Shown one piece after another: positions 3,845-57,420 of a stretch of 57,721 nt of DNA. The notes under the pieces were generated by a model that was not told the origin of the DNA, made no database searches, and saw nothing but the letters and a program-made list of their open reading frames with translations. Position numbers and translations under genes: made by a program. Source of the DNA: Macrostomum lignano (Eukaryota); the NCBI GenBank assembly GCA_002269645.1, contig NIVC01004151.1, positions 1 through 57,721 on the forward strand, given 5' to 3'. Position 1 is the first letter of the stretch, and the number at the start of each line of letters is the position of its first letter.

Positions 3845-6800
3845 TTAGCTGTTGAAAGTGTCTTTCAGACTGGCAGTTTGCATTGGAATGCAGTCTTGCA
3901 GATTTTGTTTGAAGTCGTCAAGACTGCGCACTTCAATGCCCTGCAAAGGATATATACGAGTATGTACACGAGTACAATTAGGGCAATGGTTGAAATATTG
4001 ATCAGCACTTACTGCTAGTTTATCCTGTTAAAGCTTTACGCTATTTTTACTTAGATGACGATACACTCAGATTTTTTAATTTGCCTGAGAGCCTAAAGGT
4101 ACTGTATACCTGTATTTATTCATAACTACACGCCGAAGGCAACATTTCCAGTTTAAAAAAACAGAAAAGCACATGTACACTCGTACAATGCTGCCGGCTC
4201 ACCTGATAGGTAGCATAATAATCGTCCTGAGCATTAAAGGTGAACTGCTGCCTATTGATTTTGTGAACACTCAGCACACGCCTGTCTTGCGAACCCTGTT
4301 TCAGCCATTTCTAAAATATATAGTTTACAGTGATTACATGTAATACAGGTATGTACTGTGAGGGCTCATTGGCACGATGGGTTACAATGTAAGTGGGAAG
4401 TTTTTGATTGGACAAATCAAATAATCAAATCATCATTTATTTGTACAAGCACTAGCTGATGAACAACTTTGACAGAAATTGTACATTGGGGCAGTAGTGG
4501 AAGGGCTGGGTAAATGTACATTGGGGCAGAAAGGAAAGGAGTCGAAGGACTGAGCAACAATATGTGCATTGGGGTAAGGAGTGGAAAGTCTTGGAATTAA
4601 GCACATGTACATCGGGGCAGGAGTGGAAGGGCTGGGTAAATGTACATTGGGGCAGAAAGGAAAGGAGTCGAAGGACTGAGCAACAATATGTGCATTGGGG
4701 TAAGGAGTGGAAAGTCTTGGAATTAAGCACATGTATATTGGGGCAGGAGTGGTAAGGGGCTGGGCACATCTACATTTGGGTAGAAGTGGAAGGACTGGGA
4801 CATGTACAATAGCCACACAGTACGAGCTATAACGACGTTATAGTATGTATATTGCTGGGAAAATTTGTGCCAATGCGTCAAAGTCTTGAAACTTTAAACG
4901 TTCACTTCGGATTATCGAACGCTTACTAGTGGGTAAACAACTAGACAGCTCACCTTCCAATAATTGTAAAGATCCTTTTTGCTAATTCTATCCAGAATAG
5001 TTTTGACATTGGTGTCCAAACTATGGGTATCCCAGCTGAAATCGTAGTCGCCGCAGGTGATGTGTCGCCAGTACAGCTCATGCTGCCTGTTTAAATTTGG
5101 CGCAGTAAACAGACGTGTCGCAAGCTGTTGCACTCGACTCTTCATACCCGCCAGCTGCTCCTTGGTTATGGAATCCACTGTTTTACCGACGCATGCGATT
5201 ACCAACTCGATTGTTGTTTCAATCTGCGTGCAGATGTTTAGCAACAGGTCAATATTCATGCAGTAAAACAGCTTGCTACATGTCATTCTGAATGTAAATC
5301 CGCAAGAAAATACAGTAGCAAAATATTCTGTCAGCCAAGGTCTCAAGAAACTGGGGCACAGAGTCAAAGGGCGTGTCTCTGAATCGTCCACCGGCAGTTA
5401 AAGAAACGCCGACTGAGAATGCCGTGTCCTTGCTGTGAATGCATATATCTACTGCATCTAATACCTAGAATAATTGCATGCAGAAGGCAGGTTGTGAGCG
5501 CGCAGGCACAACGCTTTCGACGACATGGTTCCACGGCCAATGCTCCGAGGCAATTCCGAGCGCGCCAATACTGTACGCAGGCACCCATGCACTCATTATA
5601 CACACGCTCACACAGAGTGCACAGCTTGACCTTCTAATCGTCAGGCATGTGCACTCTCTGCGCCTTGGAAGTTGGTCCTCATGGCTGTGAATCGCACGAC
5701 AGCTCTTCTAATGAGAAGTTCAAACCAAGAGACTTACCGCAACGGGATGCGACTCGGAGACTAGCTCAATGACGATGCAGTTGGCATTGCAGCCAATCAC
5801 CGTGTCCCACCTTAAATCGCGCTTTGTACAGTCGGGCAGTTTGGTACAGAGTGTCAGAGCTTCTTTCAGTAGCCACAAGCAGCAATTATGCCAGAACCGA
5901 CGGAAGAAGAAGTCGTCGTATTTTGACGCTTGCTTTTTTAACCCTCCCGATATCGCAGTCGGCATCTGAAGCAGCAGGCCGCAAACCGACTTGGTCAACG
6001 CAGCGTCGCCTTTCTTCAACCTCGTAGTCCGGCTGGTAAGTTCGATGCTTCTGTTAGTAGCGAAGTTCAACCGGATGAAATGGTGACTGCCTCTTGGTAG
6101 GAGTCGCTCAGAACAGCGCATAAAAAATGGATCCAATCGAAACGTGTCCGCTGGACGCCGCGAAAGTGGTGGAAGAACAGCTGTAATTGAGTCAACCAGT
6201 GAGATGACTTGCTCAGCAGTGAGATTGCCCAGCGCCAGAATCTCAGCATACAGTTCTGGCCGGCTGGGCCAGTTCTCGCGTTCCAGCGGAGTGGCATGAG
6301 CGGGATTGGAAAAGTGATGCGCTATGAAACTTGACGGATTGATTTCCACTTCTCGGTCTGGCTTTTGTGCTATGAGAGGAAAACATTGTGCAATTATGGT
6401 TGAGCTACAAGTCAGTGCGACAGTTTACAATCAATGGTACCTCACTCACCCAGCGTTTGCGTATCCAAGGACTGATAGTCTCGCTGGATGTGTAAAAATC
6501 CAGCCAGATCCAAGCGATTTGCAATCTGGGATAAGTCTGAACAGGGCTGTAATGAAAACTTCTGCGCTCTAAGATTTCCAATGCGCTCCTGTGCAAAGGT
6601 GAACGAAATGTTCAAAATTAATTTGAATGCAATGAATGTAATTTTAAATTTAAAAAATAACTTTGATGGGCTGCATCTTAAATCCTGAGCCGCTGGACCC
6701 TAAGCACATACTGTACGCAGGCACGCAGTCATAACAACCGCTCACACAATGTTTACAGCGGCCCTGACTTTCTAATTGTCAGGCACGTACAGGGGCGTCG

Positions 6801-9800
6801 CTACCGGGAGGACAGGGGGGGGGGGAGGACATGCCAATGCCTTGTCCCCCCCACCCCATCTTCGTTGACCTGTAATGGAAATAAAAAAATCGCTTCAGAG
6901 CGACAAAACATAGCGCCTGCGGACAAAAATGGTGCCTGCGGCGCTAAAATGAGTGCCTGCGGCGCTAAAATGGGTGCCTGCGGTGCTATAATGAGTGCCT
7001 GTGAACCAAATTGAGTGCCTGCGGCGCTAAAATGAGTGCCTGCGGTGCTAAAATGAATGCCTGCGGTGCTAAAATGGTCGCTGACGACACCGATTCTGAA
7101 AAAATGTACATATAGTAATTTAGTCGTGTACATGTACATTTACAATTCTTGGCTTTGTCCCCCACCATAAAATCCATGGCAACGCCCCTGGGCATATACA
7201 CTCTCTTTGCCTTGGGGGTTGGCCCTCATGGCACCACACCTCCCGGTCAATCTTCCGACCTTCTACGGAATCGAACCAGGGGTCGTGTTGCGCGAGATTC
7301 AGACGCATTATAACTGAACTTCTCTGCCCACAGTGTTTTAAGGCAGTCTGCCAAAGGAAGACACACCTGGTTGAAGTAGTTTAAGGGAACTCGCAGCTCT
7401 GCAATGCGACCCAATGCGGCCAACAAAAGGGCCGGTAGAGGCTCGCTGTGACCGCTGCAGCACACCTGGATGCCGTTGCAGCTTCGAGAGACGCTCAGCT
7501 CAAGGTCGGCTTCAACCGCTTGCATTTTCAGATCGGCCAGCTCTTCAGAAAATAGATTGGCCAGAATGCTGATCTGCAGAGACGAGGCCAGGGCGAGCCT
7601 CACAACGTCAACTGGAGGCAGCAGGTCAACGGATATGTAGGCAAGTTCGGTTTGGAACCGGTCATCTTGTCGGAACCAGAGATTAGTGCTGGATGAGCTG
7701 CCGTCTAGTGTACTTTGGCGTTTGATTTTTCGAGGCCCGTTAGGCTGTGGGTTTTAATTATCGTTTTATACCGCAGATACTACATGATGAATACGGTGAA
7801 CTCATTGCTCATAGCTCATTGGCCCATAGAGTAGAAAGCAGTTGAGTAGAAAGCTTCATTGGATAAGACTCGTTTATTGGTCCAGCTCGCTTTAACCGTA
7901 GCTTAAATTTTTTCTTGAACACGTCTTTTCACAAATAGTCTTTTTACCTCCTCTCTAGACCTCTTCAGCCTAACGCTTTCATGCAATGCATATTCTCAAT
8001 GACGCTGTTTAGTGCACATTACGTCTGCATCAATTAGCAAGCTGTAGACGTCTACAAGTCACTACAACTACGGTTCTTTACATAAAATAGCTATCACATT
8101 CTCGCTTGCTACTTCCTGACTGAAATTTAAGGAACTAAGCTGGCATGTCTAGTAGTCCGTGATCTATCGATTATAGCAAATGCGGTTAATGTCAGTATGA
8201 CCAAAAATATGACCGCAGTCAAAAATTTATTTATTTACTGACCTGATTAGTTAAGTCTCGGGGCTTTAAACTAAAATTTTTGCACACAAACGGCCTCGGT
8301 CTTGGCCAGGTGAACACAGTGTCAATCTGACAGCTTGCAGTTGGCCATTCGGCTCTGCACAGAGCCAATAAGTTTTCAGACAGCTTCTCCAAATTGTAAG
8401 GAGCTATGCCGTCGGGCTGGCAGCACAGCCTTCCGTCGGGAGCTGAAGTTGATGTGTTGAAGTTGCGATTGTTGCTTCTTAACTACAAAATACATGATTT
8501 ACTATTCTTCGACTACAAAACCCTTTGGTCCCGCAAGAAACAATAAAGAGATTTTAGCGCTTTTTTGTTGTTGAAATTCTTGCAAATTTAAGTCCGCATG
8601 ATCAAGCGAAACTTGTGATGGCCAAGTTCTAATAAATCCATGTACACACTCTGTGTGCCTTGGGGTTAAATTGGTAGGACAGCCCCTAGAAAGATTCCTG
8701 GAACAAGCCCAAATTATGTAGACTAACACAATCGAAGCATGGTTTGTGTTGTGCAAGAGTCAGAAACGCTTCCGCTGAGCTGGCCTGCCTTAACAAAGTA
8801 AAGACAGCAATTCTCAACAGTTTTTAGACTCTCTGTTCGAAATTCATACGTTCGAAATGCATCTGACTCTTGCGCAACACCACCGGCTTGTGCATAAAAT
8901 TAGCGAGAAGGGGGTTGCAATGCGTACACGATTTACGCCTTCGAGAGCCAGAGGCACAGAGAGTGTACATGCCTGACGATTAGTAAGTCAGGGCCGCTGT
9001 ACACTCTGCGTGAGCGTGTGTATGAGTGTGTGTCTGTGTACAGTATTGACGCTCTCGTATGTACGTGCTCAGGAGTCAGCGGAATGGCCAGAATTGCAGC
9101 GCTGGTTGTGGAACGATGTCGCCGAAGGCGTTGCGCCGTCCCTACCTACATCGCTCCTGCGAAGGTTTATACTTTTTATAACCCAAGTCTCACAGCTGAA
9201 TAAGCATACGTGCTCCGTATGCCAGTCCAAGTCGGAAACGAACACTCTGCACTGGTCCACAGTCAGACAAGCCAGAAACCCGTTCATTTCCTCGGCAGAA
9301 TAGCTCGAAAGCAAGTGCCTGGCTGAGAGCACATCCGCGATCTCGTACCGGTGCAATCGAGTCGCGATGTTGAACTCGTCATTCACCAATGGCAGGCGTT
9401 TTAGCTTCAGAAAAGCAGACCAATCGTCAACTTCAGGTAGGAAATGCGCCCGTCTATCTAACCTGACCTCATTGTGCAGCTGTTCGAAATGCTGCGCCTG
9501 ACTGCGGATCATTGCCAGGTAGCGGAAGACTGCACTAATTATCTGCGAGTCAATGAAAGTAAGTTGCGAAGAAAAAATTAGGAAATAAGTTTTTATAAGA
9601 GATCGCCTAATGAAGAGTACGAAGATACTGAAGCGATATTAAAGACACAGAAACAGGTCCTTAGCTTATGTCGAAGCTTATGTGAAGCTCAAAGTTTTAA
9701 TATTGATCTCAATTAGATTTCCGCCCTTGATAAATTTAACCAAACGTACCAAGTCTTCTGTTTCCACAGTATACTTCGTTGTTTCATCGCAGTGAAGAGC

Positions 9801-11427
9801 AATGCAGAACGTATCAAAATCAATGCAGCCTGTGTCCGTCAGGGACGCGCTATCTAGCTGAACTCCGAGCTTAGTACGCAAATACTCCTTCAGACTGCCC
9901 AGTCCATCCCTGCCAAACAGATACTTCACTAATAGATCGGGCGATTTTTTGTGCAGATCGGTCTGATCTGGCAGCGGGAACACAATGAATATGCCGCCCA
10001 AGTTCATGCGCTTGCCGCGAATCTGTGCATAAGTAGCAGGGGTGAGTGGATGCAGTGGATGCAGTAATCCGCACTGCTAGACACAATTTCTATGTTTGTA
10101 TTCTTCGCCTCAAATCCACTGTTTTTCACTGTAAACTACCAGAGGAAGAACACCCTGAAAATTAGCCAGAGTAAAAGGCCAGTGACGAGCGAGGCCAGAG
10201 CTGACGCAGACACATGTCGTCGACGTGCTGATAAAATTTGGAGAGTTGACAAGGCCGCACTGAGACGCAATGCTGATTGACACATAGGGGTGTATTGAAA
10301 TGCACTAAGGTTTACAAGGGAAAAATTCTGGTAGAATTGTTGAATATCTCGACGGTCTGGAAAATGGCTAATTGGTATTCTTTCTGTTAATTTAGGAGCA
10401 CTCTTTTTCGGTGGCTGCGTTGACGTGACGCAAAAAGCCTATATTTGTCTGTGTAAGCAACCAGTACTAACTCGTAAGTATAGGCATTGTAAGTTTAAAT
10501 AGTAGTCACAAAGAAGGAGTACGTCACTGATCAAGTCTATTTCCCAATTACCTTGGTTCCGCCTAACGCAGTGTATGATCCCTCCAACGGATGCTGACCC
10601 TTCGAGCGTACTCGAGAGTCAGTCGGGGTTGAAAAATCAAATTTTGTGGCGGCAGTCAGGCTCTGAAATAAAGAGTTCGGAGTTCTCATTTAGGGATTAG
10701 ACGCCTGTAGTTTATCGCAGTTTAAATTGGAGTTGAGTATTTTTTATTTCTAGTTTTAATACTTCACTGTGGCATGCTATTTGTTCATTGAATGTCATCC
10801 CGTACATACCACAAGCTCGTCAGTTGAGCGACCATCTTCCAAAGCCATTCGCCTCCGGCAGTTTGAGTTGAAATGCCGCTTGTGGAATTCAGCTAGCCTA
10901 TCGCACAGTTCCTCGATCTGAAACAACTCGACTGTGCGCTGGCTCGGTTGAACCATCCGATTGTAGGGGTGATTCGAATTTCCCGAACAACGCTGCAGCC
11001 AATTCAAAGAGGATAGTTGTTGCTTGTACTTTTCCTTTTTGATTAAATACTTGATTCTGTTCGCAGAAAATTCTGGTGTTGTAATGCTTTTGATCAACTG
11101 TTTGAGCACCTTTGATACGCTGTCTGAGGAGGTTATTTTGTAGCTGAACTCAGTTCGGTCATCGGCAACTCTCACACTGCCAGTCAAGCCGATTGTAGAA
11201 TCCGTTTGCATGGCAACCATGCCTGCCAGCAGTTCAGCCAGTCCCAGACAGTCTGGCGGATCGTGCAAGCGACCAACACCGATGGTGAGGCAGAGCAGCG
11301 ATTTTCGATCGAGCGTGTCCTCAGTTTGGCTGACTAGACAGGCCGAGTAATTAGACGCTGTTTCTATGGCAACGCACTTCGACTGCAATGGTGCCGGAAC
11401 ATCTTTTAATATTTTGCCGATTTCCAT
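3845..11427 (-). CDS. M16A (insulysin/nardilysin-like) pseudo-peptidase A, complete, ~1057 aa
   Basis: Phase-consistent exons 11427-10810, 10662-10552, 10022-9750, 9542-9194, 8442-8243, 7744-7367, 6588-6450, 6369-5738, 5223-4954, 4310-4203, 3940-3845, with no frameshift. IDE-like motifs VGRLHDPPDCLGLAELL, FPLPDQ, VFRYL, WFRQDDRFQ, YWRHITCGDYDF, RRVLSVH. HxxEH is replaced by ELLAG. A further upstream exon cannot be excluded. Confidence 0.85.
4478..4810. repeat. Intronic tandem repeat, ~126-bp unit x~2.5 built from TGTACATTGGGG sub-units
   Basis: Direct repetition is visible; it explains the repetitive ORFs at 4433-4816. Confidence 0.85.
5495..5670 (+). repeat. Dispersed repeat family R2 (about 200 bp; core TACTGTACGCAGGCAC...CACACGCTCACACAG...TCGTCAGGCATGTACACTCTCTG)
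   Basis: Related intronic copies at ~6700-6790/7192-7225, 8940-9140(-), 24020-24135, 28575-28700, 30785-30920(-), 51440-51625(-), 53885-54055. Confidence 0.75.
6790..7191. mobile_element. hAT-like MITE carrying a 21-bp minisatellite, inserted into an R2 copy
   Basis: TIRs CAGGGGCGTCGC...GCAACGCCCCTG, imperfect 8-bp TSD GGCACGTA/GGCATATA, internal (GAGTGCCTGCGGCGCTAAAAT)n. The R2 sequence resumes after the element. Confidence 0.7.
8940..9140 (-). repeat. R2 dispersed repeat copy
   Basis: Reverse complement similar to 5495-5670 and 53885-54055. Confidence 0.75.
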
Positions 11428-12134: not shown

Positions 12135-15100
12135 ATGGCTCAATCAGGGAATGCGGTAAGTTTATATAGACCTTAAGAACGTAATTTTTACGATGTCCAC
12201 AATTGCATTGTTTTGTACAGCATTTTACGAGCTAGAGGATGTCAGTTTCTCTGAAGAAAATTAATAGTAGTTGTTTCATAAAAAATTATTTTATACCACT
12301 ACTAGACTGATGCAGCAGCCAGTGTGTCTCAGAGAGTCGACAACCTGCCTGGGCCGAAGAAGTGCACCTACAGAGCCATCGAGCTGACAACCGGTGCCAC
12401 CGCCTGTCTAATTCAAGAAGCTGAAGACGCCGACCCTTACGGACGTCCGTCGCAGTCAAATTTGATTGTCAGCCTTGGCGTCGGTCGTCAGCAAGATCCG
12501 CCAGACTGTCGTGGCCTGGCCGAGCTCTGCGCCGAACTGACGGTGCTCGAGCTTAACCAAAACTTTCTTTGTCAAAGCATTCTCGACGATTTGACTTCTT
12601 ACATAATTCATTTGGAATCGTTTCATCTCGAAAGCTTCTTAGAGGCCTTGTGCGCTGGAATTCGAAACCCCCGATTTGAAGAGGCCAACATAAAAAGTCT
12701 GCTTCAGTCTGGCCGATACAAACAAAGCTGGCCAGCTCTGGAGTTTCTGCAGCGCTGCTCGGGGAACAGCTCCTCAGCTCACCCATTCTATCGGCTTGCT
12801 CAACTGACGTCAGCCGAGCGAACTGTTGAATCATTGGAGATCAGTGAGCTTAGAAAACGACTGATTGAATTTCACGAACGATACTACTCCGGCAATCTGC
12901 TGCGTATAGTGGCTGTTGATTCAAGATCGCTGGACACATTGGAGGCAAGTGTTCCTGTTCAAATATACGTTTAAAAAGAAGTCAAGCAGATTCTTCTAGC
13001 TGAAAGTATCCCAGCTACAAATGAAGCATGTAACAATCAATTTTAGAGCATTATTGTGACCACATTTGGCGGCATACCCAATCGTTCGGCTCCTAAAGTG
13101 GACATCAGCTCTCGAGAATTGGAGGACGTGAAAGTAAAATCGGGCGGAATCAAGGTAAGCATTCGAGTGGATTGAAACAAACAATAGCTTGTTTCAAACA
13201 ATAAGAGAAACATAAAATGACTCTTTGCGCTGTTCAATCCCAGATTCGAGGCAAGAGCATGAACGTGGACGGAATTCATCTCGTGTTTCCTCTGCCAGAC
13301 CAATCCAGCTTGAGTAGCATTGCACCGGATCTTTATGTGAAGCATTTGCTGCGCAGCAAGCATGTCGGCAGCCTTGAAGCAAGTCTAAACTTGCACGGAT
13401 TTAGCTTGAACTCTGCCCGGTTGATGGATTTCGGACAAGTTGGATTCGATTTCTTCTGCATTTCTGTGCAGTGCAATGCTGAAAATAATCAGATAGAAGA
13501 CGAAAATATGGTCAGTTTTAATTTTTGTTATCTCTAACGATTGCTGGTTCAGTGTGTGACAGTACTTGAGTGGCATGACCCTACTTCGAAGTAGATGCCA
13601 AGGCCTATGGGAGGTATTGCTGAAACTCTGTGTCTCATGGAGAGTTGTTCAGATGCCTTGAGCCAAAGCTCATAGGAACTCTCATATTTTAGGGTGGATA
13701 CCTGGCTTTTAGAGCATCATTTAGAGTGACTGTACAAGGGAAAAACCTACATGTAGTTTAAAAAAATGTACTTCTTTCTTTGTTGCCTTCCAAACGAGGG
13801 GCGCAGATTGCTAGTTTAAACATGAAAATACATTGACTTTATTTCTCGAATTCTCTACAGGCCATCAAAATAGTGTTTCGCTACTTGGCCATGATTCGCA
13901 GTGTTGGTCCACTAAATTGGCTACACAATGAGCTTCGCTTGACTTTGCAACGCGAATTCGCACCGAAAGGAAAGCTGGACGAGTCCCTTGAGCCCATGGA
14001 TCCTATGATTAATCTGCTACTGCATCTGGCATCTGACGATTATTCGTTAGCAACTCGGCTTCAAAGATTTTCACAGCGCGACGCTTTAACAGCTCGACAC
14101 CTGATCACTGAGTACTCGGCTCAGGCCATTGCAGACTTTCTAACCTTTTTGACGCCCGACAGGTGTATTGTGTACGTCTCTGATATTGGTTGGAATAGCA
14201 AGCCGGCTTGCAACTACCAGAGTAAGCTTCTATTGGTCTATGACGGACGGATGTATTTCACGCTGTGGGGTTGTAGCGCCGTAGTGGGTTGGAGCCTTAG
14301 TGGTTAGAGCGTCAGACTCACGACTGATAGGTCGCACTCAGAACAATTTGTGTCCTTGAACAAGACACTCTGCATTAACTCTACACTGTTTCAGTTCAAC
14401 CAGCTGTAAAATGAGTGCCAGCATTAGCTGGTGTAATTGAGGGTGTGTGTGTTGCGACCCCCCCCCCAGTCCTTGGACTGAACTAAGTACGCAGCCTTCG
14501 AGATGCGCCGCGCAATAGCTGCGGCTGAGCTGTCGGTTGCACATCTGGCCATTAGGATAGGTGTAATCATTATTATTATTATTCACGCTTGGACACAGAG
14601 TACATACTTGACGATCGACAAATTCAATGCTGCTGTACATTCCATTTAATTGTGTACCTCCGTACGTATTTGTGTTCGTGTTTGTGCCTCAATGGTCTGC
14701 GGAATGGGTATGACTGCTTGTCTGACTTCCAGCCGTGTCGAAGCTCCCCAGCTACTAATTAACATTAAGTCTCACATCTAATTACCGAAAGACTTAACGT
14801 CAATGCTTAAACAATAGTATTTAAAGACGTCTTAATCTTGACCTTGCAGCTCCCAGTGGCAAGCTCTGCTGCGTGCCGGAAGGTCAGCAGGCTGAGTACT
14901 CCACCGAAAAGCTGTCACCAGCTCTTTTGAACCTCTGTTCAGCTCCGTGGCCGAAACAAGACTGCGATTTGGATAGAGAGTTCAAGATGCCGCATTCAAA
15001 GCCATTTATGCCTTCGGATATTAGTTTAAGACCGAGAGTTAGCAAAGCTCAGGTAAGAACTTTGATTTGATATGTAGTCAAATTACAAGGTTGAACGAAA

Positions 15101-17864
15101 ACTTTAATTTACTTTTGATTAAAGCTGTTTATCAGTCAATCTTCGATTAATAAAAGCTAAAATCGGTGCTTTTGCTACTTCTTTTATAATCTTCTAATAA
15201 AACTTCATACTAACATCTTAATCAGGATTGCAATAATTTGCTGTCGATAGTAAACAAAAGCTATGAAAAGTTACTTTTTTCAGTAATTATTACCAAGTTT
15301 GTTTAACCATGTAATACTCGTACAACTGGACCTCATCTGAGGACAAAAAATGATAAAATCGCATTTTCACGAAGTTGTGTCAGCTCTTAATTGATCCCAA
15401 CAGGCGTGCGTCACAATTTCTTTATTTGAACACCTGCTGCTTATCCGCATTTTCCCTCAGCTTCCGGGGCCTAGGCAGCTTCGCATACCACCAATGCCGA
15501 ACTCGGTTTCGTCAAACTCCCGACTCTGGTTCAGACAGGACGACAGGTTTCAGTCCGATTTGGCCTACATTTCAATCGACCTAATTCCTCCAATTGAATG
15601 CAGTCCAAAGAATCAAATTATCTTGGAAATTTTGGTTCAACTATTTTCTAAAGCGTTGCACAAGCTCAAGAAGCAAGCTGCCGAAGTCTGTATGGAGTTG
15701 AGCATCTCCCGTAGCAGCAACGGTATCCAGCTGTGCTTTTCCGGATACAACGAACCGCTGCTCAAGTTAATAACGACTGCTCTGCATCAGATTGCCGATC
15801 TGAAGATCACCAAAGAAAGCGTTCACAAGGTCTGCTGTGGCGTTATTCATATCCTTTAAAGACTTGTCAAATTTTACTTTAATTACATACTTTGCCTACC
15901 AATACTAATTTCAGGTCGGCTCAAAGGTTTTGCACCTTGCAGATGAATCGGCGAGCAAAGATGAAGAAGTCGACCAGCTCGCGTGCCAGTTGAACTTGGC
16001 TGGCTACTCGCATATGCAGCAGAAACTGGATGGAGCAGTCTCAATGGTGAGCAGTTATACTGTTGTTTCGTCAAAAGGCATATCTGCTTGCACTATCCAA
16101 TTTTGCGACACTCTAGGCGTACCAATCAAGGATTTAATGTCCGTTGCCAGTTACTTTTGCGAAGCCGCCAAAACAGTACAAAAACAGCCGAGCAAAAGCC
16201 CCAAGACCGGTGCGAAATCTGCACCGGGTCTGTTTGCTGACATCCTGGTGTTTGGCAACGCTACCGCGGACGATGCAGTCAAAGCTGCTCAATCGATCCT
16301 GACTGCCCTGCCGTCGCTCTCGTCAACAGCAAAGATGACATCGAATCCTAAAGACCAGCAGCGTCGCCCTGAGCACCTTCTTAGCAAAGGCAGTTACAGT
16401 ACAGTGCAACTTGGAGGCGCTGAAAAATGCGTGGCTGTCAGTCAGAGCGACTGCTACAGCAGCACCTCCTGCGTCTGCGCCATTCTCATTCAAATTCCAT
16501 TAGCAAAAGCAAAGCCTCCAATATCGATGAGTGCCGCAACGAAAGCGCTAGGGGAAGAGTTTTTCACGCGAGCAAGTCACGATTGTCTGCTACAGATGAT
16601 GCTAGCAGCTGCTGTTGCTACGCCTTCTGACAGGATTGAAAGTAAAATATCGCTTGGTTACGGCGCGAACTGTGTCGTATTTCAGAAGATCATCGAGCAG
16701 TCACCTGCTAAGGTAAGTTTCAAGCATTTTTTGCCAAGTTTGCCATTTTCCCCAGTAGTTAGGTTTTCCTGTCATGGTGATAATTCCTTGTGAACTCAGA
16801 ATTATAGCCTATTATAAGTAAACTTAAGTCTTGTCTTAAGTCTTAGGGTCGTAGCCTAGTGGTTATAGCGTCACACTCACGACTGAAAGATGCGGACCCA
16901 CGCGAAATAACTTGTGTCCTTGAACAAGACATTTAACTCTGCATTGCTTCAATTCAACCAGCTGTAAAGTGGGTGCCAGAGCATTAACTGGAGTATTTAA
17001 GGGTGTGGCGACTCCCAGTCCTTACGCAGCGAAACGAGCCGTACGCAGCCTTCAGATGCTGCTGAACTGTCGGTTGCACATATGACCATTAGGGCTGGCG
17101 TAATCAATTATTATTGTTATCAAGTCGTGCTGATTTGAAGCCCCAGAATGAAAGAAATCTTTTTCAGATGGAAAAAGAGATCGAGTCCTTTATTGCTAAG
17201 ATCGGAAATCACTTGACTGCAATGTCTTCGGAGTCTTTAGAGACCTACAAGCAGAAAGCTCTTCAATCAATGCAAGCATTGACAGTACCTAAAAGCATTG
17301 AGCAGCATCACTCAATGTACTGGACTCGCATCATGTCCAGAAATTTCGAATTCAGTTGGGATGACCCGCGAGCGATGGACTGTCTGCGCGCTATTGTGGA
17401 CAGTATAAAAAAGGAGGACCTGTTGAACTACTGGAAGGTAAACGTCTGGCTTTACATATAAATTCAATTCAATTTTGTGACAGCCAACTGTCGGTAAATC
17501 CCTGATCAATAAATAAATGAGTGATTTAGTTGCTACTGCACTCCAAGACGTGCAAACCCTTTTATCAGTAAGACGTCAATAATCATCCCCAACCTAACGC
17601 CCCTAAATCTATAGAAATGGTTTTGTTCGGAATCTAAAGACCGCTCCATGCTCTGTCTCCAAAACTATTGCCGAATGGACATCGACAAGTCCGGAACGTC
17701 TGTAAGTATTTTTTACCGTGCCTTTTTATTTATCGTTTTAGCCGTCTATCCGTCAAAAAATGTTGCAGGGCAAAGTCATCGCGGATCTGGAGAAGTTCAA
17801 GAACTCTCTTGAGCCGGCTGCCCTACCGATACCAAGCTGTCTCAAGACTGTGCACGACGCCTAA
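12135..17864 (+). CDS. M16A pseudo-peptidase B, complete, ~1072 aa
   Basis: Exons 12135-12155 (MAQSGNA), 12306-12944 (GC donor), 13047-13154, 13244-13510, 13861-14221, 14850-15052, 15461-15829, 15915-16712, 17168-17437, 17615-17701, 17769-17864. All phases match and there is no frameshift. HxxEH is replaced by ELCAE. Confidence 0.85.
14267..14581 (+). mobile_element. tRNA-derived SINE with a Nin/Deu-like central core
   Basis: A-box-like AGCCTTAGTGGTTAGAGC, core GTCCTTGAACAAGACAC...CCAGCTGTAAAATG, (ATT)n tail. Seven copies in the window. Confidence 0.75.
16845..17117 (+). mobile_element. tRNA-derived SINE copy
   Basis: TAGCCTAGTGGTTATAGCG head, same core, ATT-rich tail. Confidence 0.75.
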
Positions 17865-18830: not shown

Positions 18831-18888
18831 TCGTGATGCAAATTTTGTGGCACAGTTCAAGTATTCAGCATTGGCCCCTTTTCAACAG

Positions 18889-20455
18889 GCGTTACTATGA
18901 GTGATCTGCAGTCCATCGTAGATGTTTTTCTCAACTCGTCTAAAGTCGAGTCCCAGCCGCAGACGGAAGAGGCATCACCTTGGATTTTATTCGCTGATAT
19001 TCTGGTGCTCATGATGATGCTATCACGTCTGCTCAATCCGTTCTGTCAGTGATTCCAGCTTTGTCAGCTGAGACAGCAACAGAATTAGAGTCCGATTTTT
19101 CTAGATTCCGTCGCCCAGAGCGCCACCTTTGCAAGGGAAGCCACAGCACCATCCAGCGGTGCCAGGACCAAGAATCACACAGAGCTCATCGCCAACGACA
19201 TGCTGCCTCTACTTGCGGCTTCGTCATTCAGATTCCTGTGGCGATGGACGAGCCTCCGTGGCGATGACGAATGCTATGAAGAAACTGGGAGAAGAGTTCT
19301 GCAACCGAGCCTGTCACAGCTATCTGCTACAGTATATATTGGAAGTTTCTAATGGAGTGGAAATATGCAAAGTCTTCCGAGCCGTATCGCGAGGTTACAG
19401 TGGCAATTGTTTCCTGGTTGAAATGAGCCACGACAATTCACCTGCAAAGGTTGGACAAACGAAAACCTTACTGAGTGATATTTGATGCGCGATACTAATT
19501 TATACGTGTCATTTGGAAGTAACCAGTCTCTTTGCGCAATGATATTCATTTTTGAGATTAAAATTGTCGAATAATATTTTTACATTATTTCCCTGCTACT
19601 TTCTCTCAGATGGAGAAGCAAATCGAGTCTTTTATTGCTGAGATCGAAAATCACTTGACTGCAATGTCTTCGGAGTCTTTAGAGACCTACAAGCAGAAAG
19701 CTCTTCAAGCAATGCAAGCATTGACAGTCCCTAAAAGCATTGAGCAGCAGTACTCAATGTACATGTACTGGACTCGTATCATGTCCAGCAACTTCGAATT
19801 CACCTGGGATGACCCGCGAGCGATGGACTGTCTGCGCGCCATTGTGGACAGCATCGGAAAGGAGGACCTGTTGAACTACTGGAAGGTATATTTTTGGTTG
19901 ATTAGGTCGCTGAGTCGATTACCGATCGGACTTCTATCAATCTTATTAGTGTCATGGATCTTGAGCTGAGTCATGCACGAACACCTGTTGTTAGTTATAT
20001 TCTACTTAAACAGGGCGCACTTTGTGTTAGCTGGTTTTGTGCTTGGTACATTTGTATCTCCTTAAAAGGTCACGTCAAGGATGATCACCGGGGTTGCTTA
20101 ATTGTTTATTTCCATAGCCTTTCAATTTCTTTATCTTCTCCCCGCAGAAATGGTTCTGTTTCGGATCGCCAGATCGAACTGTTTTCGAGCTACAGAACTA
20201 TTCAAAACTAGCGATTGATGAATCTGGAACATCCGTAAGTGTTGAAAAATCTTTACAAACCTAGTTATACCTTCACGCATGTAATTTGTTATTTTAAATT
20301 TGAATATACCATAGTTTCAAAATTTGTTTCCTAGACTTTGCTTTTAAATAACTCATAATCGTGATTTCTAAAATCATTTGTAGGGCACAATCATTTCCGA
20401 CTTGGAGACGTTAAAAAGTAGTCTGGAAGCATATCCAATACGATCACTTAATTGA
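18889..20455 (+). pseudogene. M16A paralog C: 3'-only fragment related to gene B
   Basis: Exons 18889-19449 (frame breaks at ~19010 and ~19257), 19610-19885, 20148-20234, 20384-20455. No N-half or domain-3 exons lie between B's stop (17864) and 18889. Confidence 0.7.
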
Positions 20456-24200: not shown

Positions 24201-24680
24201 TGCACTTGGAATCTAGCCTGGGTCGCTGGCACACCAGAGCCTGCGCTAGACCGCTGGGCTACGGCCCCCCTCATGCACCCGCGTTGGTCAAGTTCATGTA
24301 AATTCACAATATTGTCGTCATTAATGAACGACTGCACAATAGGACAGTAGACGTCATTAATGAACGACTGCACAATAGGACAGTAGACGTCATTAATGAA
24401 CGACTGCACAATAGGACAGTAGAAGATCATGAAACACTACATGTAAAAGCGAATTCAATATTTTAAGCCCCATAATCCGTTTCTCATAGACTGCACAAGT
24501 TGTAAGCGCGAACTTGACGAATGCGCTGAGTACAGACTGGAGAAATTTCAACCACAACTTCTTGCCGTCTGCTCGGCTGATTGGCCATCAACTGAGTGCG
24601 AAATTGATGCAAGATTTCAACGCCCAAAACCGTCGCCAATGCGCCTAGTTGAAATGACAAAGAATCTTCTATTGAACCAG
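21203..24680 (+). CDS. M16A module D: N-half only (domains 1-2 plus linker), probably spliced to E
   Basis: Exons 21203-21574, 21962-22270, 22455-22565, 22715-22971 (1 nt short), 23546-23873, 24490-24680. HxxEH is replaced by QLCNE. No C-half exons before E. Confidence 0.7.
24317..24424. repeat. 36-bp tandem repeat x3
   Basis: GTCATTAATGAACGACTGCACAATAGGACAGTAGAC repeated. Confidence 0.9.
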
Positions 24681-45800: not shown

Positions 45801-46559
45801 GTAGGCCGATGTGTGAGAGTAGTGAATGAACAATGTCACTGGATCGAATCAGCTGCTTGTTTCCTATCGCTCTTTTTTTCCAGATTGAAGAACAAGTGGA
45901 AAATTATATCGAAAAAATTGGCGATTACATTTCCTCTCTGTCAGAGGAGTCATTCCGATACTGCTTATCAAGCATGGAGAAATCGATGCGCAAAGAAATT
46001 CCTACTACTGTCCAGGAGCAGCACGATTCCCATTGGCGCAGCATCACTCACGGTGTGCTGCGCTTCGACCGGGACGCAAATTTGGCCAAGTGTTTAGACG
46101 CAGTGGTTGGAGGCATCAAGAAGGATTGTCTGCTTGAACTATGGCGGGTAAGTAGCAAAGTAGCAAAGTACCAATTTTTTACCAGCGTTTATCAGATTCA
46201 ACTTGAACTTAAGTTGGAGCTTATATAATTAGTCTTGTATAATATATACCGTTCGCGCCGCTTCCAGTCCTGCTTAAAGCGGGGATCTCCGAACCGGCGC
46301 AAGCTGTGCATCCATCGAATCTCCAGGGCGGCTTTCCCCGACGGCATCAGCGAGGCTGACTACGCTGATTACCCGGTGAGTCCTGAAGCCATACGCACTT
46401 GTTGACTCTTGTAGCGTTGGATGCGTTCTCCTTAATTAATTCTCTAAAAAACTCTATTTCCAGGGAACCATCATACGTAACAGAAATCTTTTCAAGCAAA
46501 GCCTGCTGCTAAGTCCCTTGCCATCGGTACAGAATTTGCGTCCGAACTCTGATGTCTAA
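39844..46559 (+). CDS. M16A pseudo-peptidase G, full four-domain module (two single-base frameshifts)
   Basis: Exons 39844-40565 (-1 at ~40138), 40680-40778, 41379-41654, 42215-42563, 42680-42879, 43138-43512, 44640-44775, 44818-45547 (-1 at ~45278), 45884-46147, 46268-46375, 46464-46559. HxxEH is replaced by ELCHR. It begins at a splice acceptor with no ATG of its own. Confidence 0.75.
40888..41362. repeat. 79-bp intronic tandem repeat x6
   Basis: The unit start AATAGCT recurs at 40964, 41043, 41122, 41201 and 41280. Confidence 0.95.
41745..42030 (+). mobile_element. tRNA-derived SINE copy
   Basis: GGTTCGATTCCCG B-box plus core. Confidence 0.75.
43620..44570. repeat. 20-21-bp intronic minisatellite (GCCAGCTACAGAGGGGG(C/T))n
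   Basis: About 45 copies; source of the spurious ORFs at 43572-44721. Confidence 0.95.
45545..45840. repeat. 50-51-bp tandem repeat x6 that begins at a splice donor
   Basis: AAGGTAGGCCGATGTGTGAGAGTAGTGAATTAACAATGTCACTGAACCG repeated. Confidence 0.95.
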
Positions 46560-53794: not shown

Positions 53795-53884
53795 GTGAGT
53801 GCGAGTTTAGCAATGAAAAATGTCTTGCTGGAAATTTTTATGCTGCCATAAATAAAATCAATAGACACATCGATTAGCAGAAGG

Positions 53885-54055: not shown

Positions 54056-54252
54056 TAAGTTAATGCGAGTCGCATACGAGCGTAAAAACCTCCCCAGCCA
54101 ATTTTCGTGTGCACAATCCCTTATTTAATGTGGCGTTCGGAATGGGACGTGTTTACACTCTGCTCTCATTTATAATTACGTGTATACTTTGATATCTTAA
54201 GTAAGATGCCTCTTTAAAGTCGCTCATAATAATCCGTTTCTCTACCCTACAG

Positions 54253-57200
54253 TTCTCTACTATTCGATCAGAGTCTTCAACGTTGATAAAATCTCGTTGC
54301 AACGATCTCGGGGCACCGGTGTCGCTCGAATACGCTACGACAAGGTGCAACTGCTTGGAGTTAACGAACGGCGCCCAAGCCATTCTGCTGCACAGCGAAG
54401 GTCTTGAAAATAAATCATTCGTCTGCGTCAGCCTTGGCGTCGGTCGGTTGCACGACCCACCGGACTGTGCGGGACTGGCTCAGCTGTGCCAGCGCCTGAC
54501 TCTGCTTGAGTCGAAGAAGTATCCAAACATAACCGAGTGCTTGCACAATCTTCTCTATATAAACAGCTATCAAGGGTCGCCGTACTACGCGACGAGCGTT
54601 TCCGACGACCAGACAACTTACCGGTTCGAAATCGACAATTCATTCTTACATGAAAGTCTAGACCGTCTTAGTGCGGGTATCCTGAGCCCTGAATTTACCG
54701 AGTCTAGTCTTACCCGTGAGCAACATCAGAACTTCTACAGTTGCAAGATTTCTGCCTTGGATTGCCTACAGCGCAGCTCGGGAAATTCAACTCATCCGAT
54801 CAATCACCTGATACAGGGCAATAATAAGACCGTGGGTTTGCTTGAGTTCAAAGAGCTGCACAAGCATCTAACTAGCTTTCATTCGCGGTACTACAGCGCT
54901 AATCTGCTGCGTGTAGCAGTGTCTAGCAGCCACAGCATGGAAGACATAGAGGCAAGAGATCATTTTTATGTCACTTTTTTAATTGAGTCAGGGGTGCTAA
55001 ACAAACAGTTTAATGTTTCAACAGGCAATGGTTCTCACAGCATTCGGTGGAATGCCGAATCTGTCAGTATCGCCGCTGTCCTGCTATACTCACCCGTTCG
55101 AGGGCTCTAAGTTGGGCGTCAAGGTAAGCTTTATCTCTCTCATGGTCTCAATTACCAGGACCACTAGAAATTGTGTCGTATCAGAATTTAGCACTTACCG
55201 TCTATGAAAAAATCTAATTGAAGGCTAAATTTCGCTCAAATTTGCGATCGTCGTAATATCGATCGTAGGAGGTAAGAAATTGTCGAATAAGTGATTGAAG
55301 ACGATAGAACGTAACTGCTACGTCCTGATGCAAACTAAGCTTCTAGTGATCATTCAAGATTTTTACAGGGCTTATAAATAATAACTTTGCATTACCTAAC
55401 TTGTCCAGATTCGAGGAAAGTCATTAAGCCTCGCGGAGCGCTGCACATCGTGTTTCCTCTGCCCGACCAGACGGAGTTGTACAAAACCTCACCCGATCTG
55501 TACGTTAGTTACTTTCTCAACAGTGACTGCGGCGGCAGTTTAAACGCCTGTCAGGATCAGCTCAATATTGCAACAGTATCCGCCGGGATGCAGAACTCCG
55601 GTTCGCTAGGATTCGATTCGTATTGTGTGACAGTGTTATTATCGAATACTACTGATCTAAGTAAAGCTGATCTGATTAAAACTGAGAACAATGTGAGTAC
55701 TTTATAAACAGAGCAGGATTATTTACAAAAAACAAGTTAGTCGGGCCTTTGGACACTGCCGAAAATAAAGGTGGCAGTCTCTCTAGCCATGACAGATGAA
55801 GGCAGTGCAGGTAAAGGCCGGTTCACATTACCACTAATTGCTATGCTGGTCAAAGATTGCCCAAACCAACAATGCACAGTCGATTCAGGTTCATTTAAAA
55901 AATAAATTTGAGCAATATTTTGTCCCCAGAGTTACTGATGGTACTACGAAGTGGTCTTCTAATAATATTGTAACTTTAAATTTCTTACATTCTTCGGACG
56001 TCCAATACTTAAGCTTATAACTTATTTTGCTTTTTAACTGTGTAGATAGACACTTTCAACAACCTTCACCTATCAAACCATTTTAAAATCTGTAATAAAT
56101 ACTCGTGCTATTGCTAGCTATATTTTATTGATGTTAACGTGGACGAATCTCAACATTTTTAGGCAATAACAGCCGTATTCCGGTACCTAACAATGCTGCG
56201 ACAGCTGGAGCCTCGGGAGTGTCTGTTCAACATGGTCCGTCTTGCTCAAAGAAGGCTGTTCAATTTCGACCGCGAAGGCGAGTGCATGGCGCCGGGCAGT
56301 GAAAAACTCGACCCGTTGCAGCGGTTCTGCGATGAGTCGCTGCAGGTGCATTTGCAACGGTATCCAGTTAAGGAGCTGCTTACTGCTAGAAGTGGCGCCA
56401 AGCTTGAATACTCGGCACAGGATATCGCGGCATTCCTTCGCTTGCTTGTTCCAACCAACTGCAAGATTTTCGTCTCCGATTTTGGAGCAGATGCCGATCA
56501 CGAGTGCTCGTTGTTAAGTGAGAATTATTTCTGTTTCTTATGGTGTATTTTTACCGCAGCACCAATCTGCTCATCTTTCCTGGTGTGATAAACGCAAGGG
56601 CGTTGCCAGAATTCTTCTTTGGGAGGCTGAGTCGTCTGGGGCTTTAGCACAAAGGGCTTTAGCACCAGGGGCTTTAGCACAAAGGGCTTTAGCACCAGGG
56701 GCTTTAGCACTCTAGGGCGCCAGCACCAGGGGCACCAGCACCAGGGGCGCCAGCACCAGGGGCGCCAGCACCAGGGGCGCCAGCACCAGGGGCGCCAGCA
56801 CCAGGGGCGCCAGCACCAGGGGCGCCAGCACCAGGGGCGCCAGCACCAGGGGCGCCAGCACCAGGGGCGCCAGCACCAGGGGCGCCAGCACCAGGGGCGC
56901 CAGCACCAGGGGCGCCAGCACCAGGGGCGCCAGCACCAGGGGCGCCAGCACCAGGGCGCCAGCACCAGGGGCGCCAGCACCAGGGGCGCCAGCACCAGGG
57001 GCGCCAGCACCAGGGGCGCCAGCAACAGGGGCCAGCAACAGGGGCACCAGCACCAGGGGCTTTAGCACCAGGGGCTTTAGCACCAGGGGCGCCAGTACCA
57101 GGGGCGCCAGCACCAGGGGCGCCAGTACCAGGGGCGCCAGCACCAGGGGCGCCAGCACCAGTGTGTAAAGTACATTGCCATAAAAAATCCGTCGTATTTT

Positions 57201-57420
57201 CGTCCGTCACTCCCCAGCACCTGGCGGCAGTCTCTGCTGCAAGCCGAAGAAGGCAAACGAGCTGCACACGCTGGAAAAGCTGCCATCGGATCTTCTCACC
57301 GCCTGCTCAGCCAGCTGGCCAACTGCCTCCATCATGGCGGACACTTTGATCAAGCGCGCCAAGGGAAAACTTGTTTATCAGTGCCGATTTTCAACTTAAA
57401 TCGAGAGAGAAAAATTTGAG
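54253..57420 (+). CDS. M16A module I (N-half visible; continues beyond the window)
   Basis: Exons 54253-54951 (GC donor), 55025-55123, 55409-55692 (1 nt short at ~55433), 56163-56517, 57218-57420 (internal frame slips). HxxEH is replaced by QLCQR. It begins at a strong acceptor, TTTCTCTACCCTACAG. Confidence 0.75.
56640..57160. repeat. 15-bp intronic minisatellite (GGGGCGCCAGCACCA)n
   Basis: About 33 copies; source of the spurious ORFs at 56525-57267. Confidence 0.95.

What the first reader, a model, noticed from the sequence alone, without database searches (positions are those of the whole stretch)
3845..57420. Tandem expansion of catalytically dead insulysin/nardilysin paralogs
All eight N-modules replace the inverzincin HxxEH (IDE GLSHFCEHM) with GLAELLAGM, GLAELCAEL, GLSQLCNEI, GLARLCQRL, GLAELCLRL, GLAELCHRL, GLAELCQRL or GLAQLCQRL. 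In A and G the PxF-to-GN segment is 33 aa against 39 in IDE, and the AVDSE third-ligand motif is absent in all modules. Yet A, B and E are intact over about 1000 codons with conserved splice sites despite very high divergence, which implies selection for a non-proteolytic role. IDE and nardilysin have known non-catalytic activities (peptide/amyloid trapping, HB-EGF binding, sheddase activation). A diversified peptide-trap or sensor repertoire is my inference.
Basis: partly seen in the sequence, partly recalled or inferred. Interest (0 to 1): 0.85.

Follow-up and report, generated by a model that had tools for sequence, protein, structure and literature searches.

The report
Dead insulin-degrading-enzyme gene cluster in a flatworm
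This contig of the flatworm Macrostomum lignano carries five neighbouring genes that descend from the animal's own insulin-degrading enzyme, have lost every residue needed to cut peptides yet have been kept intact by selection, and include three genes with an unusual extra half-enzyme; at least one is switched on in the testis region, so they look like a new family of non-cutting "pseudo-enzymes" of unknown role.

Summary
All eight quoted motifs are in the window, and each aligns with the HxxEH zinc site of insulin-degrading enzyme (IDE). The window is a whole 57,721-bp contig of Macrostomum lignano (assembly Mlig_3_7).

The eight "modules" are five genes, not eight:
- A (minus strand, 1053 aa) and B (979 aa) are ordinary four-domain units.
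- C+D, E+F and G+H are each one roughly 1600-1680-aa gene, with an extra IDE N-half spliced in frame onto a full unit (N-N-C).

All eight N-halves lack both zinc histidines and the catalytic glutamate. Seven of eight lack the third ligand. All five C-halves lack the conserved R/Y pair.

In a neighbour-joining tree the modules form one clade (100% bootstrap) that joins M. lignano's two active IDE genes (100%). No nardilysin-like acidic insert was seen among the best 145 relatives.

Synonymous sites between modules are saturated (pS 0.73-0.83) while pN is 0.41-0.49, so the coding sequence has been under purifying selection.

Four genes have transcript-based GenBank models. G+H is classed testis-region and germline-enriched in published RNA-seq.

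The function is unknown. A non-catalytic binding clamshell in the male germline is my inference. I found no relatives outside M. lignano and no publication on these genes.

The parts
3845..11427 (-). Gene A (BOX15_Mlig006666g2, 1053 aa). It is a four-domain IDE-like unit with 11 exons. ATG is at 11427 and the stop codon at 3845-3847. The motif GLAELLAGM lies at 11218-11244.
   Evidence: P0180 maps exactly to the window with canonical GT..AG introns. Pfam matches M16_M, M16 and M16_C. The AF2 model has pLDDT 79 and the top 50 Foldseek hits are all IDE.
12306..17864 (+). Gene B (979 aa; UniRef model P0181/P0001), a four-domain unit with 10 exons. The first exon starts right after an AG, in phase 0, without an ATG. 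The motif GLAELCAEL is at 12513-12539. It lacks the 36-aa penultimate exon that A has.
   Evidence: Exon maps are. The M. lignano spliced leader ends in ATG (PMC8629364), so a start codon supplied by the leader is inferred.
19610..19885 (+). B': a lone duplicate of B's exon 17168-17437, with ag/gt flanks.
   Evidence: blastn gives 90.5% identity over 283 nt. Nei-Gojobori (NG86) gives dN 0.047 and dS 0.255.
21203..24683 (+). Module C: the N-half (domains 1-2 plus linker, 546-547 aa) of gene CD. The motif GLSQLCNEI is at 21431-21457. There is a 1-nt deletion at ~22722 relative to the full-length model.
   Evidence: P0174 mapping; frameshift; in-frame donor at 24683|gt.
25228..32604 (+). Module D: the full four-domain part of gene CD (BOX15_Mlig021631g2 on this contig, 1230 aa; full CD model P0174, 1602 aa, 17 exons). 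The motif GLARLCQRL is at 25471-25497.
   Evidence: P0018 and P0174 both contain the C-to-D junction ...LLLNQ|VVGCKS... that I had predicted independently.
33829..39730 (+). Module E: the N-half (573 aa) of gene EF. The motif GLAELCLRL is at 34225-34251. An acidic, Ser-rich insert precedes the motif.
   Evidence: P0005 and P0011 mapping.
39844..46559 (+). Module F: the full four-domain part of gene EF (BOX15_Mlig028065g3 on this contig, 742 aa; full EF model P0011, 1680 aa). The motif GLAELCHRL is at 40087-40113. There are 1-nt deletions at ~40129 and ~45279 relative to the full models.
   Evidence: Mlig028065g1 is expressed in a published differential-expression table (PMC12896417).
47804..53794 (+). 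Module G: the N-half (582 aa) of gene GH. The motif GLAELCQRL is at 48110-48136.
   Evidence: P0006 mapping. The same gene is intact on L001.
54253..57721 (+). Module H: the first roughly 558 codons of the four-domain part of gene GH (BOX15_Mlig000040; 1650 aa, 17 exons on L001). It is cut by the end of the contig. The motif GLAQLCQRL is at 54472-54498.
   Evidence: Pfam M16 x2, M16_C x2 and M16_M x2 on P0006. Testis and germline annotation of Mlig000040.g2/g3/g9 (PMC7336406).

Best explanation
The window holds a lineage-specific cluster of five transcribed genes that arose from duplication of the flatworm's own insulin-degrading enzyme (family M16A). They keep the four-domain clamshell fold. 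They have lost the zinc site (both His and the catalytic Glu of HxxEH, and the distal Glu in seven of eight N-halves) and the R/Y pair of domain 4, so they cannot act as canonical M16 peptidases.

Two genes (A, B) are ordinary N-C units. Three genes (CD, EF, GH) carry an extra N-half spliced in frame ahead of a full unit (N-N-C).

Shown:
- homology and fold;
- loss of the catalytic residues;
- one clade with the species' active IDEs;
- purifying selection on the coding sequence;
- transcript-based gene models, and testis/germline expression of GH.

Inferred mechanism: they work as non-catalytic binding clamshells (pseudopeptidases) in the cytosol of male germline cells. They would hold peptides or unfolded protein segments in the IDE-type chamber, as catalytically inactive IDE can. 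In the N-N-C genes, the extra N-half would offer a second, alternative lid for the single C-half, or a way to pair with another molecule.
For: Identity of the window:
- It is a whole M. lignano contig.

Homology and fold:
- Pfam M16, M16_C and M16_M score above their cut-offs on P0006 and P0011.
- Human IDE is the best PDB match by sequence, E 2.5e-17.
- The AF2 model of A has pLDDT 79 and pTM 0.82. Its top 50 Foldseek hits are all IDE, E about 2e-47, aligned over the full length.

Loss of catalytic residues:
- HxxEH is replaced in all eight N-halves.
- E189 is lost in seven of eight.
- The LRTKEQLGY R/Y pair is lost in all five C-halves.

Origin:
- After the dead paralogs, the best of 4638 profile hits is M. 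lignano's own active IDE (413 bits), followed by a second active paralog (308 bits) and then generic IDEs (258 bits or less).
- In a neighbour-joining tree the dead clade has 100% bootstrap, and dead plus active M. lignano IDEs have 100%.

Selection:
- pS is 0.73-0.83 (saturated) against pN 0.41-0.49 in 13 module pairs.
- Open reading frames of 979-1680 codons are retained.
- The B/B' exon pair has dN/dS 0.18.

Fusions:
- Independent models P0174, P0018, P0005, P0011 and P0006 all read through in-frame junctions.

Expression:
- The GenBank annotation is built from RNA-seq transcripts (PMC5730564).
- Mlig000040.g2 has read counts of 6 in the head fragment against 724 in the fragment that also includes the testes, and is classed Testis and germline_FACS (PMC7336406).

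Precedent for binding without cutting:
- Titles and abstracts retrieved for PMC3623905 and PMC4521159.
Against: - No biochemical evidence exists. 'Dead' rests on sequence alone.
- Tissue data were retrievable only for GH, with a single differential-expression entry for EF. The tables were cut before the identifiers of A and CD. No GenBank model for B turned up in the searches run; its models are UniRef predictions only.
- On this contig CD and EF carry 1-nt frameshifts, so this particular copy could be decaying.
- The extra N-halves and the following full units could also be expressed separately. The first exons of D, F and H begin in phase 0 after an AG, which is compatible with trans-splicing of a leader that ends in ATG.
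- The chamber-binding mechanism is an analogy with IDE. It is not derived from any conserved binding residue that I tested.
- Internal tree branches are poorly resolved (38-61% bootstrap).
Confidence: 0.7

Rival explanations
1. The paralogs are regulators of the active enzyme. Like many pseudoenzymes, the dead IDE paralogs would pair with the active M. lignano IDE (through the C-half dimer interface, or by an N-half docking onto an active C-half) and tune its activity or localisation, rather than binding cargo themselves.
For: Two active IDE genes coexist in the genome. M16 function generally depends on pairing an active half with an inactive half, for example alpha/beta MPP (PMC11266112). The extra free N-half in three genes would suit such pairing.
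Against: No co-expression or interaction data exist. The dead C-halves have lost the R/Y pair that an active partner's site needs. Five diverged genes (31-47% identity) seem more than are needed to regulate one enzyme.
Confidence: 0.15
2. The genes are decaying duplicates. On this reading the array consists of pseudogenes or pseudogenes in the making, the annotated transcripts are noise, and the frameshifts on this contig are real.
For: There are three 1-nt frameshifts in C and F and further indels in G and H relative to L001. GenBank models on several copies are truncated (742-1357 aa). B' is an isolated exon.
Against: Synonymous sites are saturated while 31-47% amino-acid identity and reading frames of 979-1680 codons persist. 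Every frameshift is a single-base deletion in a short homopolymer, and full-length models exist from other copies or the other assembly of the same PacBio data, which is typical of consensus error. GH is intact on L001 and strongly testis-enriched. A matches its 1053-aa model exactly.
Confidence: 0.07
3. The genes are still peptidases with a non-canonical metal site, for example one using the Glu/Gln/Arg residues now in the motif, or the Cys/His-rich linker insertion.
For: A keeps a Glu at the E189 position. E, F and H keep E182. A, F and H share an H-x-C-x8-L-C-C motif in the N-C linker, and B has the three Cys but not the His (and own reading of the sequences).
Against: No module keeps either zinc histidine or the general-base Glu. 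The motif residues differ between modules (E/Q/R, A/N/Q/L/H, G/E/R), so no alternative site is conserved. The R/Y pair is lost as well. The Cys-rich insertion is modelled with low confidence in the AF2 model of A (residues 443-461); its position relative to the catalytic site was not measured.
Confidence: 0.05

Closest known systems
Insulin-degrading enzyme (insulysin, MEROPS M16A); closest is M. lignano's own IDE, PAA70440.1 / UniRef A0A1I8JGJ2
   Same: Both have a four-domain clamshell of about 1000 aa and the same Pfam domain set. IDE is the best sequence and fold match. The N-half/linker/C-half boundary is shared, and so are lineage motifs such as FSPELLAAC. No signal peptide is evident by eye.
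   Different: HxxEH, E189 and the R/Y pair are lost. There is a 3-residue deletion in the E182-E189 helix. The N-C linker carries a Cys-rich insertion. Low-complexity inserts lie between domains 3 and 4. No C-terminal SKL-type ending is present. Three genes have a second N-half. Identity to the active IDE is only 26-33%.
Alpha-MPP and cytochrome bc1 core proteins (M16B non-peptidase homologues)
   Same: They are M16 members that have lost the zinc motif and act through binding or scaffolding.
   Different: Those are single halves of about 500 aa that work with an active or structural partner, and they are ancient and universal. Here whole M16A-type proteins are dead in both halves, and the family was found only in M. 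lignano. The 2024 pseudopeptidase review lists only MPP for M16.
Engineered IDE-E111Q and other proteolytically inactive IDE
   Same: These show that the IDE chamber can bind and hold peptides (amyloid-beta, alpha-synuclein) without cutting them (PMC3623905, PMC4521159). This is the working analogy for the mechanism.
   Different: Those are laboratory mutants that still bind zinc and keep all other residues. The flatworm proteins have lost the whole site and have diverged greatly.
Uncharacterised 'insulin-degrading enzyme-like' proteins of Hymenoptera (Leptopilina boulardi XP_051155398.1, Harpegnathos saltator XP_011150285.1, Dinoponera quadriceps XP_014469183.1)
   Same: They are natural IDE paralogs with a degenerate motif (CxxQH or HxxQH) and a partly degenerate R/Y pair.
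   Different: They arose independently, keep one or both zinc histidines, and are not in the flatworm clade. Nothing is known of their function.
Nardilysin (NRDC)
   Different: No nardilysin-like acidic insert after the motif was seen among the 145 best relatives checked. The modules group with IDE. The acidic or Gln-rich stretches in D, F and H lie between domains 3 and 4, not in domain 1.

Membership tests
Peptidase family M16, subfamily A (IDE-like), as a homologous family | Four tandem alpha/beta domains recognised as Peptidase_M16, M16_C and M16_M(+C) in one chain of about 1000 aa | tested here: met
   Pfam on P0006 gives M16 3.6e-21, M16_C 1.3e-14 and M16_M 2.1e-36, all above their cut-offs. 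P0011 is similar. The AF2 model of A aligns to IDE over about 1085 columns.
Peptidase family M16, subfamily A (IDE-like), as a homologous family | Closest relatives by sequence are IDE-type proteins | tested here: met
   The profile search of 1.84 billion representatives, the PDB search and the tree all point to IDE.
M16 as active metallopeptidases | Inverted zinc motif HxxEH (two His ligands plus a general-base Glu) | tested here: not met
   All eight N-halves have E/Q/R, A/N/Q/L/H and G/E/R at the three positions. Of the 145 best representative hits checked, 132 have H..EH, and several of those without it are N-terminally truncated sequences.
M16 as active metallopeptidases | Distal Glu zinc ligand (IDE E189) about 76 residues after the motif | tested here: not met
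   The aligned residue is G, R, G, L, G, W and N in B to H. Only A has Glu. Seven of the eight modules (all but C) have a 3-residue deletion in this segment.
M16 as active metallopeptidases | R/Y pair in domain 4 (IDE R824/Y831; described as conserved in M16A and M16C in PMC12731061) | tested here: not met
   The LRTKEQLGY block is absent from the C-halves of A, B, D, F and H, and present in nearly all the active relatives aligned.
Nardilysin | Long acidic insertion in domain 1 shortly after the zinc motif, and grouping with NRDC rather than IDE | tested here: not met
   No representative hit shows such an insert. The modules group with the M. lignano IDEs. A named NRDC sequence was not included in the tree.
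Pseudopeptidases (non-peptidase homologues under selection) | Catalytic residues lost, but the coding sequence conserved and expressed | tested here: met
   pN 0.41-0.49 against pS 0.73-0.83. Models are transcript-based. GH is expressed in the testis region.
Pseudopeptidases (non-peptidase homologues under selection) | Demonstrated lack of activity and a demonstrated non-catalytic function | not testable with these tools
   This needs recombinant protein assays and knock-down.

The most novel reading that the evidence does not exclude
This would be a previously undescribed, male-germline family of whole-protein IDE pseudoenzymes found so far only in M. lignano. Three members have a new N-N-C architecture: two alternative 'lids' for one 'base'. 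On this reading the family acts as a diversified set of non-degrading peptide or protein cages in spermatogenesis and evolves fast, as reproductive genes do.
Probability: 0.3. Interest if true: 0.7.

Novelty: new variant of a known kind. Interest (0 to 1): 0.55.

Why it matters
Pseudoenzymes are known in M16 only as half-size partners (alpha-MPP and the bc1 core proteins). This family would be a different case: full IDE-type clamshells that lost catalysis in both halves, then multiplied, diverged and were kept by selection, with a domain arrangement (N-N-C) I found described nowhere.

IDE's debated non-proteolytic activities (holding amyloidogenic peptides, chaperone-like behaviour) could be studied here in proteins that evolution has already stripped of catalysis. 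M. lignano is a practical system for that, since it is amenable to transgenesis (PMC5730564) and RNAi has been used in it (PMC4490696).

The cluster also adds a concrete example to the pattern of rapidly evolving testis genes reported for Macrostomum (PMC7336406).

Tried and rejected
- **Structure prediction, first attempt.** An AF2 run of the H unit with a 5-sequence alignment failed (pLDDT 42) and was not used. A 114-sequence alignment was too large to send. A 69-sequence alignment worked.
- **DNA of other copies.** Look-ups of P0001, P0002, P0003 and P0005 in the contig index found nothing. I therefore had no DNA from diverged allelic or homeologous copies, and could not estimate within-species dN/dS.
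- **Concatenated query.** A query of six modules joined together returned only two proteins and missed P0018, which is encoded on this contig. The word-indexed search is therefore not exhaustive.
- **dN/dS between paralogs.** This cannot give a ratio because dS is saturated or undefined. Only the contrast between pN and pS is informative.
- **Unit duplication.** I looked for C/E/G and D/F/H forming separate clades, which would show duplication of a two-module unit. The tree does not resolve this (38-61% bootstrap).
- **Literature.** Searches for Macrostomum with IDE or M16, and for the gene identifiers in main texts, found nothing relevant. The supplement tables of PMC5816591 and PMC8662610 held no hits. 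Those of PMC7336406 are cut before the identifiers of A, CD and EF.
- **Nardilysin affinity.** Considered and rejected.
- **ORF at 357-968.** It has no Pfam or PDB match.

Full report
**What the window is.** The window is eukaryotic and intron-rich. A crude translation of one module retrieved only Macrostomum lignano proteins. Cluster look-ups show that several GenBank proteins sit on a contig of exactly 57,721 bp: PAA48429.1, PAA48430.1 and BOX15_Mlig006666g2. The window is therefore a whole contig of assembly Mlig_3_7. A second contig, NIVC01002999.1 (fetched as L001), is 99.9% and 98.6% identical to window 37795-52082 and 52175-57721 respectively. It extends past the end of the window. At least three other contigs carry near-identical copies of the locus. 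This fits the known redundancy of this assembly (PMC5730564).

**Check of the observation.** All eight motif strings are present at the stated places, one on the minus strand.
- In alignments with active IDEs, each string occupies the columns of GLAHFCEHM. The positions of H108, E111 and H112 are occupied as follows:

| Module | H108 | E111 | H112 |
|---|---|---|---|
| A | E | A | G |
| B | E | A | E |
| C | Q | N | E |
| D | R | Q | R |
| E | E | L | R |
| F | E | H | R |
| G | E | Q | R |
| H | Q | Q | R |

- In the REVNAVDSEHEKN segment, seven of the eight modules (all but C) have a 3-residue deletion. The residue aligned to the third zinc ligand, E189, is Glu only in A.
This block holds the R/Y pair, IDE R824 and Y831, which the review PMC12731061 describes as conserved in M16A and M16C.

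**Gene structure.** Mapping A- and B-type proteins onto all frames showed that A, B, D and F cover the whole length of about 900-1050 aa. C, E and G stop at about residue 500, and H runs off the contig.
- Public models explain this pattern. P0006 (PAA53923.1, 1650 aa) is G spliced in frame to H. P0005 and P0011 (1653 and 1680 aa) are E spliced to F. P0174 (1602 aa) and P0018 (on this contig) are C spliced to D.
- I had predicted the C-D junction (donor after 24683, acceptor before 25228) before seeing those models.
- The extra unit ends where IDE-N plus its linker ends, just before the PxPNPF..DFSLK motif. The architecture is therefore N-N-C.
- The cluster thus holds five genes: A (minus strand, 11427 to 3848, 11 exons, exact match to the 1053-aa model), B (12306-17861), CD (21203-32601), EF (33829-46556) and GH (47804 onward). 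A and B are head to head, 880 bp apart.
- GH is followed on L001 by unrelated ORFs, so the cluster ends there.
- Intron positions and phases are shared among modules.

**Frameshifts on this contig.** Relative to the full-length models, the window has single-base deletions in short homopolymers in C (~22722) and in F (~40129 and ~45279).
- This is why the GenBank models on this contig are only 1230 and 742 aa.
- The two F deletions checked are also present in L001.
- The window and L001 also differ by 1-nt indels inside G and H exons.
- The assembly is built from PacBio data. Intact models exist from other copies, and all the events are single-base indels. I therefore think consensus error is the likelier cause, but I cannot prove it.

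**Homology and fold.**
- Pfam finds Peptidase_M16, M16_C and M16_M above their cut-offs, each twice, in P0006.
- phmmer against PDB sequences gives only IDE (2.5e-17) and E. coli protease III.
- An AF2 model of A built on a 69-sequence alignment reached pLDDT 79 and pTM 0.82.
- Its 50 best Foldseek matches are all human or rat IDE, at E about 2e-47 over the full length. The global TM-score is about 0.5 and the rmsd about 12 Å. I read this as a different opening angle between the two halves.

**Origin.** A profile of five full-length units was searched against 1.84 billion representative proteins and found 4638 relatives.
- After the dead paralogs themselves, the best hit is M. lignano's own active IDE (PAA70440.1, HFCEH intact, 413 bits). 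A second active M. lignano paralog follows (308 bits), and then IDEs of other organisms (258 bits or less).
- A neighbour-joining tree on 393 ungapped columns puts the eight modules in one clade (100% bootstrap) and joins that clade to the two active M. lignano proteins (100%).
- Module-to-module identity is 31-47%. Identity to the active IDE is 26-33%.
- None of the top hits has a nardilysin-type acidic insert.
- No member of the dead clade from another species appeared in any search. The coverage of other Macrostomum species in those libraries is unknown.

**Selection.** Codon alignments of 13 module pairs give pS 0.73-0.83, which is saturated, against pN 0.41-0.49.
- Amino-acid sequence has therefore been conserved long after silent sites randomised. 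This holds for the N-half modules C, E and G as well.
- Reading frames of 979-1680 codons would not survive that much neutral change.
- A lone duplicate of one B exon (B', 19610-19885) differs from its source by 11 synonymous and 10 non-synonymous changes. That gives dN/dS 0.18.

**Expression.** The GenBank annotation of Mlig_3_7 derives from a genome-guided RNA-seq assembly cut at experimentally supported trans-splice and poly(A) sites (PMC5730564). A, CD, EF and GH all have such models.
- In the re-analysis of positional RNA-seq in PMC7336406, Mlig000040.g2 has a length of 4953 nt, which equals 1650 codons plus a stop. It has 6 reads in the head fragment and 724 in the fragment that also includes the testes. 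It is classed 'Testis' and 'germline_FACS'. Entries g3 and g9 are similar.
- EF (Mlig028065g1) appears in a differential-expression table of PMC12896417.
- The tables were cut before the identifiers of A and CD. No GenBank model for B turned up in the searches run.

**How it most likely works.**
- Shown: these are IDE-fold proteins without the canonical catalytic apparatus, conserved by selection and transcribed, and at least GH is expressed in the male germline region.
- Inferred: they act by binding rather than cutting. The simplest model is that the clamshell still closes around peptides or unfolded segments, as proteolytically inactive IDE is reported to do (PMC3623905, PMC4521159).
- Inferred: in the N-N-C proteins, the second N-half gives an alternative lid or a handle for pairing.
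- The N-termini show no obvious signal peptide on my reading of the sequences. This points to a cytosolic rather than a secreted seminal-fluid role.
- Rival readings are scored separately: regulators of active IDE, decaying pseudogenes, and an unconventional metal site.

**Comparison with what is known.** As a homologous family these proteins belong to M16A. As enzymes they fail every catalytic criterion I tested.
- The 2024 review of metallo-pseudopeptidases lists only MPP for M16. My literature searches found nothing on these genes.
- Degenerate IDE-like paralogs (CxxQH or HxxQH) also exist in a parasitoid wasp and in two ants. They are uncharacterised. Loss of IDE catalysis after duplication is therefore not unique to this flatworm.
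- The complete loss, the five-gene expansion and the N-N-C architecture are new as far as I could find.

**Verdict.** The gene count, the 'intact E' statement and the nardilysin link are wrong. The proposed function is untested. Interest is moderate to high for people working on pseudoenzymes, M16 peptidases or reproductive gene evolution.

Noticed in passing
window 19610-19885 (+), compared with 17168-17437: B' is a lone copy of one coding exon of gene B. It is 90.5% identical at the nucleotide level, has a 2-codon insertion and intact ag/gt flanks, and gives dN/dS 0.18. It could be a mutually exclusive alternative exon or a relic kept similar by gene conversion. A weaker match to the preceding B exon lies at 18879-19159.
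   Followed up: partly
window 12306, 25228, 39844, 54253 (+): The first exons of B, D, F and H all begin in phase 0 directly after an AG and contain no ATG. The M. lignano spliced leader ends in ATG (PMC8629364). B probably gets its start codon from the leader. D, F and H could in principle also be made as stand-alone four-domain proteins.
   Followed up: partly
window ~22722, ~40129, ~45279, ~53620, ~57356, ~57412: These are single-base indels, mostly in short homopolymers, relative to full-length protein models or to the near-identical contig L001. They are probably PacBio consensus errors, but they truncate the GenBank models on this contig.
   Followed up: partly
window 6915-7076, 26316-26449, 52175-53149: The same 21-bp minisatellite (GCACTCATTTTGGCGCCGCGG or its complement) sits in introns of A, D and G, with up to 37 copies in G.
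   Followed up: no
window 43631-44558, 56661-57161, 32926-33500, 40889-41362, 45539-45848: Large tandem arrays lie in introns of F and H and between CD and EF. They include an 18-bp unit x51, a 15-bp unit x33, a 16-bp unit x35, a 79-bp unit x6 and a 51-bp unit x6. They produce long spurious ORFs in several frames.
   Followed up: no
N-C linker of A, B, F and H (A residues ~440-490; window ~8243-8440 and ~9195-9260 on the - strand for A): A Cys/His-rich insertion relative to IDE is present here: (H)-x-C-x8-L-C-C-x-P, followed by C-x-A-x-W-P...C. It is conserved in four full units and modelled with low confidence. It might bind a metal or form disulfides.
   Followed up: no
D, F and H between domains 3 and 4 (e.g. 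window 44868-45278 in F): Low-complexity inserts are present here: acidic and Gln-rich in F, Gln-rich in H and Ser-rich in D. E has an acidic, Ser-rich insert before the motif, and G has a Ser/Glu/Gln-rich insert after it.
   Followed up: no
representative hits P0035, P0096, P0121: IDE-like proteins of Leptopilina boulardi (CxxQH), Dinoponera quadriceps (HxxQH, 1835 aa) and Harpegnathos saltator (HxxQH) have degenerate catalytic motifs. They look like independent natural 'E111Q-like' IDE paralogs.
   Followed up: partly
window 2590-2889 (-) and 357-968 (+): There is a weak RNase H-like fragment (Pfam E 0.009), likely a retroelement relic, and a 204-codon open frame with no Pfam or PDB match, both beyond the 3' end of gene A.
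   Followed up: partly
window 17437-17769 (+): Gene B appears to lack the 36-aa penultimate exon (WLK.GS..RR.LS.HKI) that A, CD, EF and GH all have.
   Followed up: no
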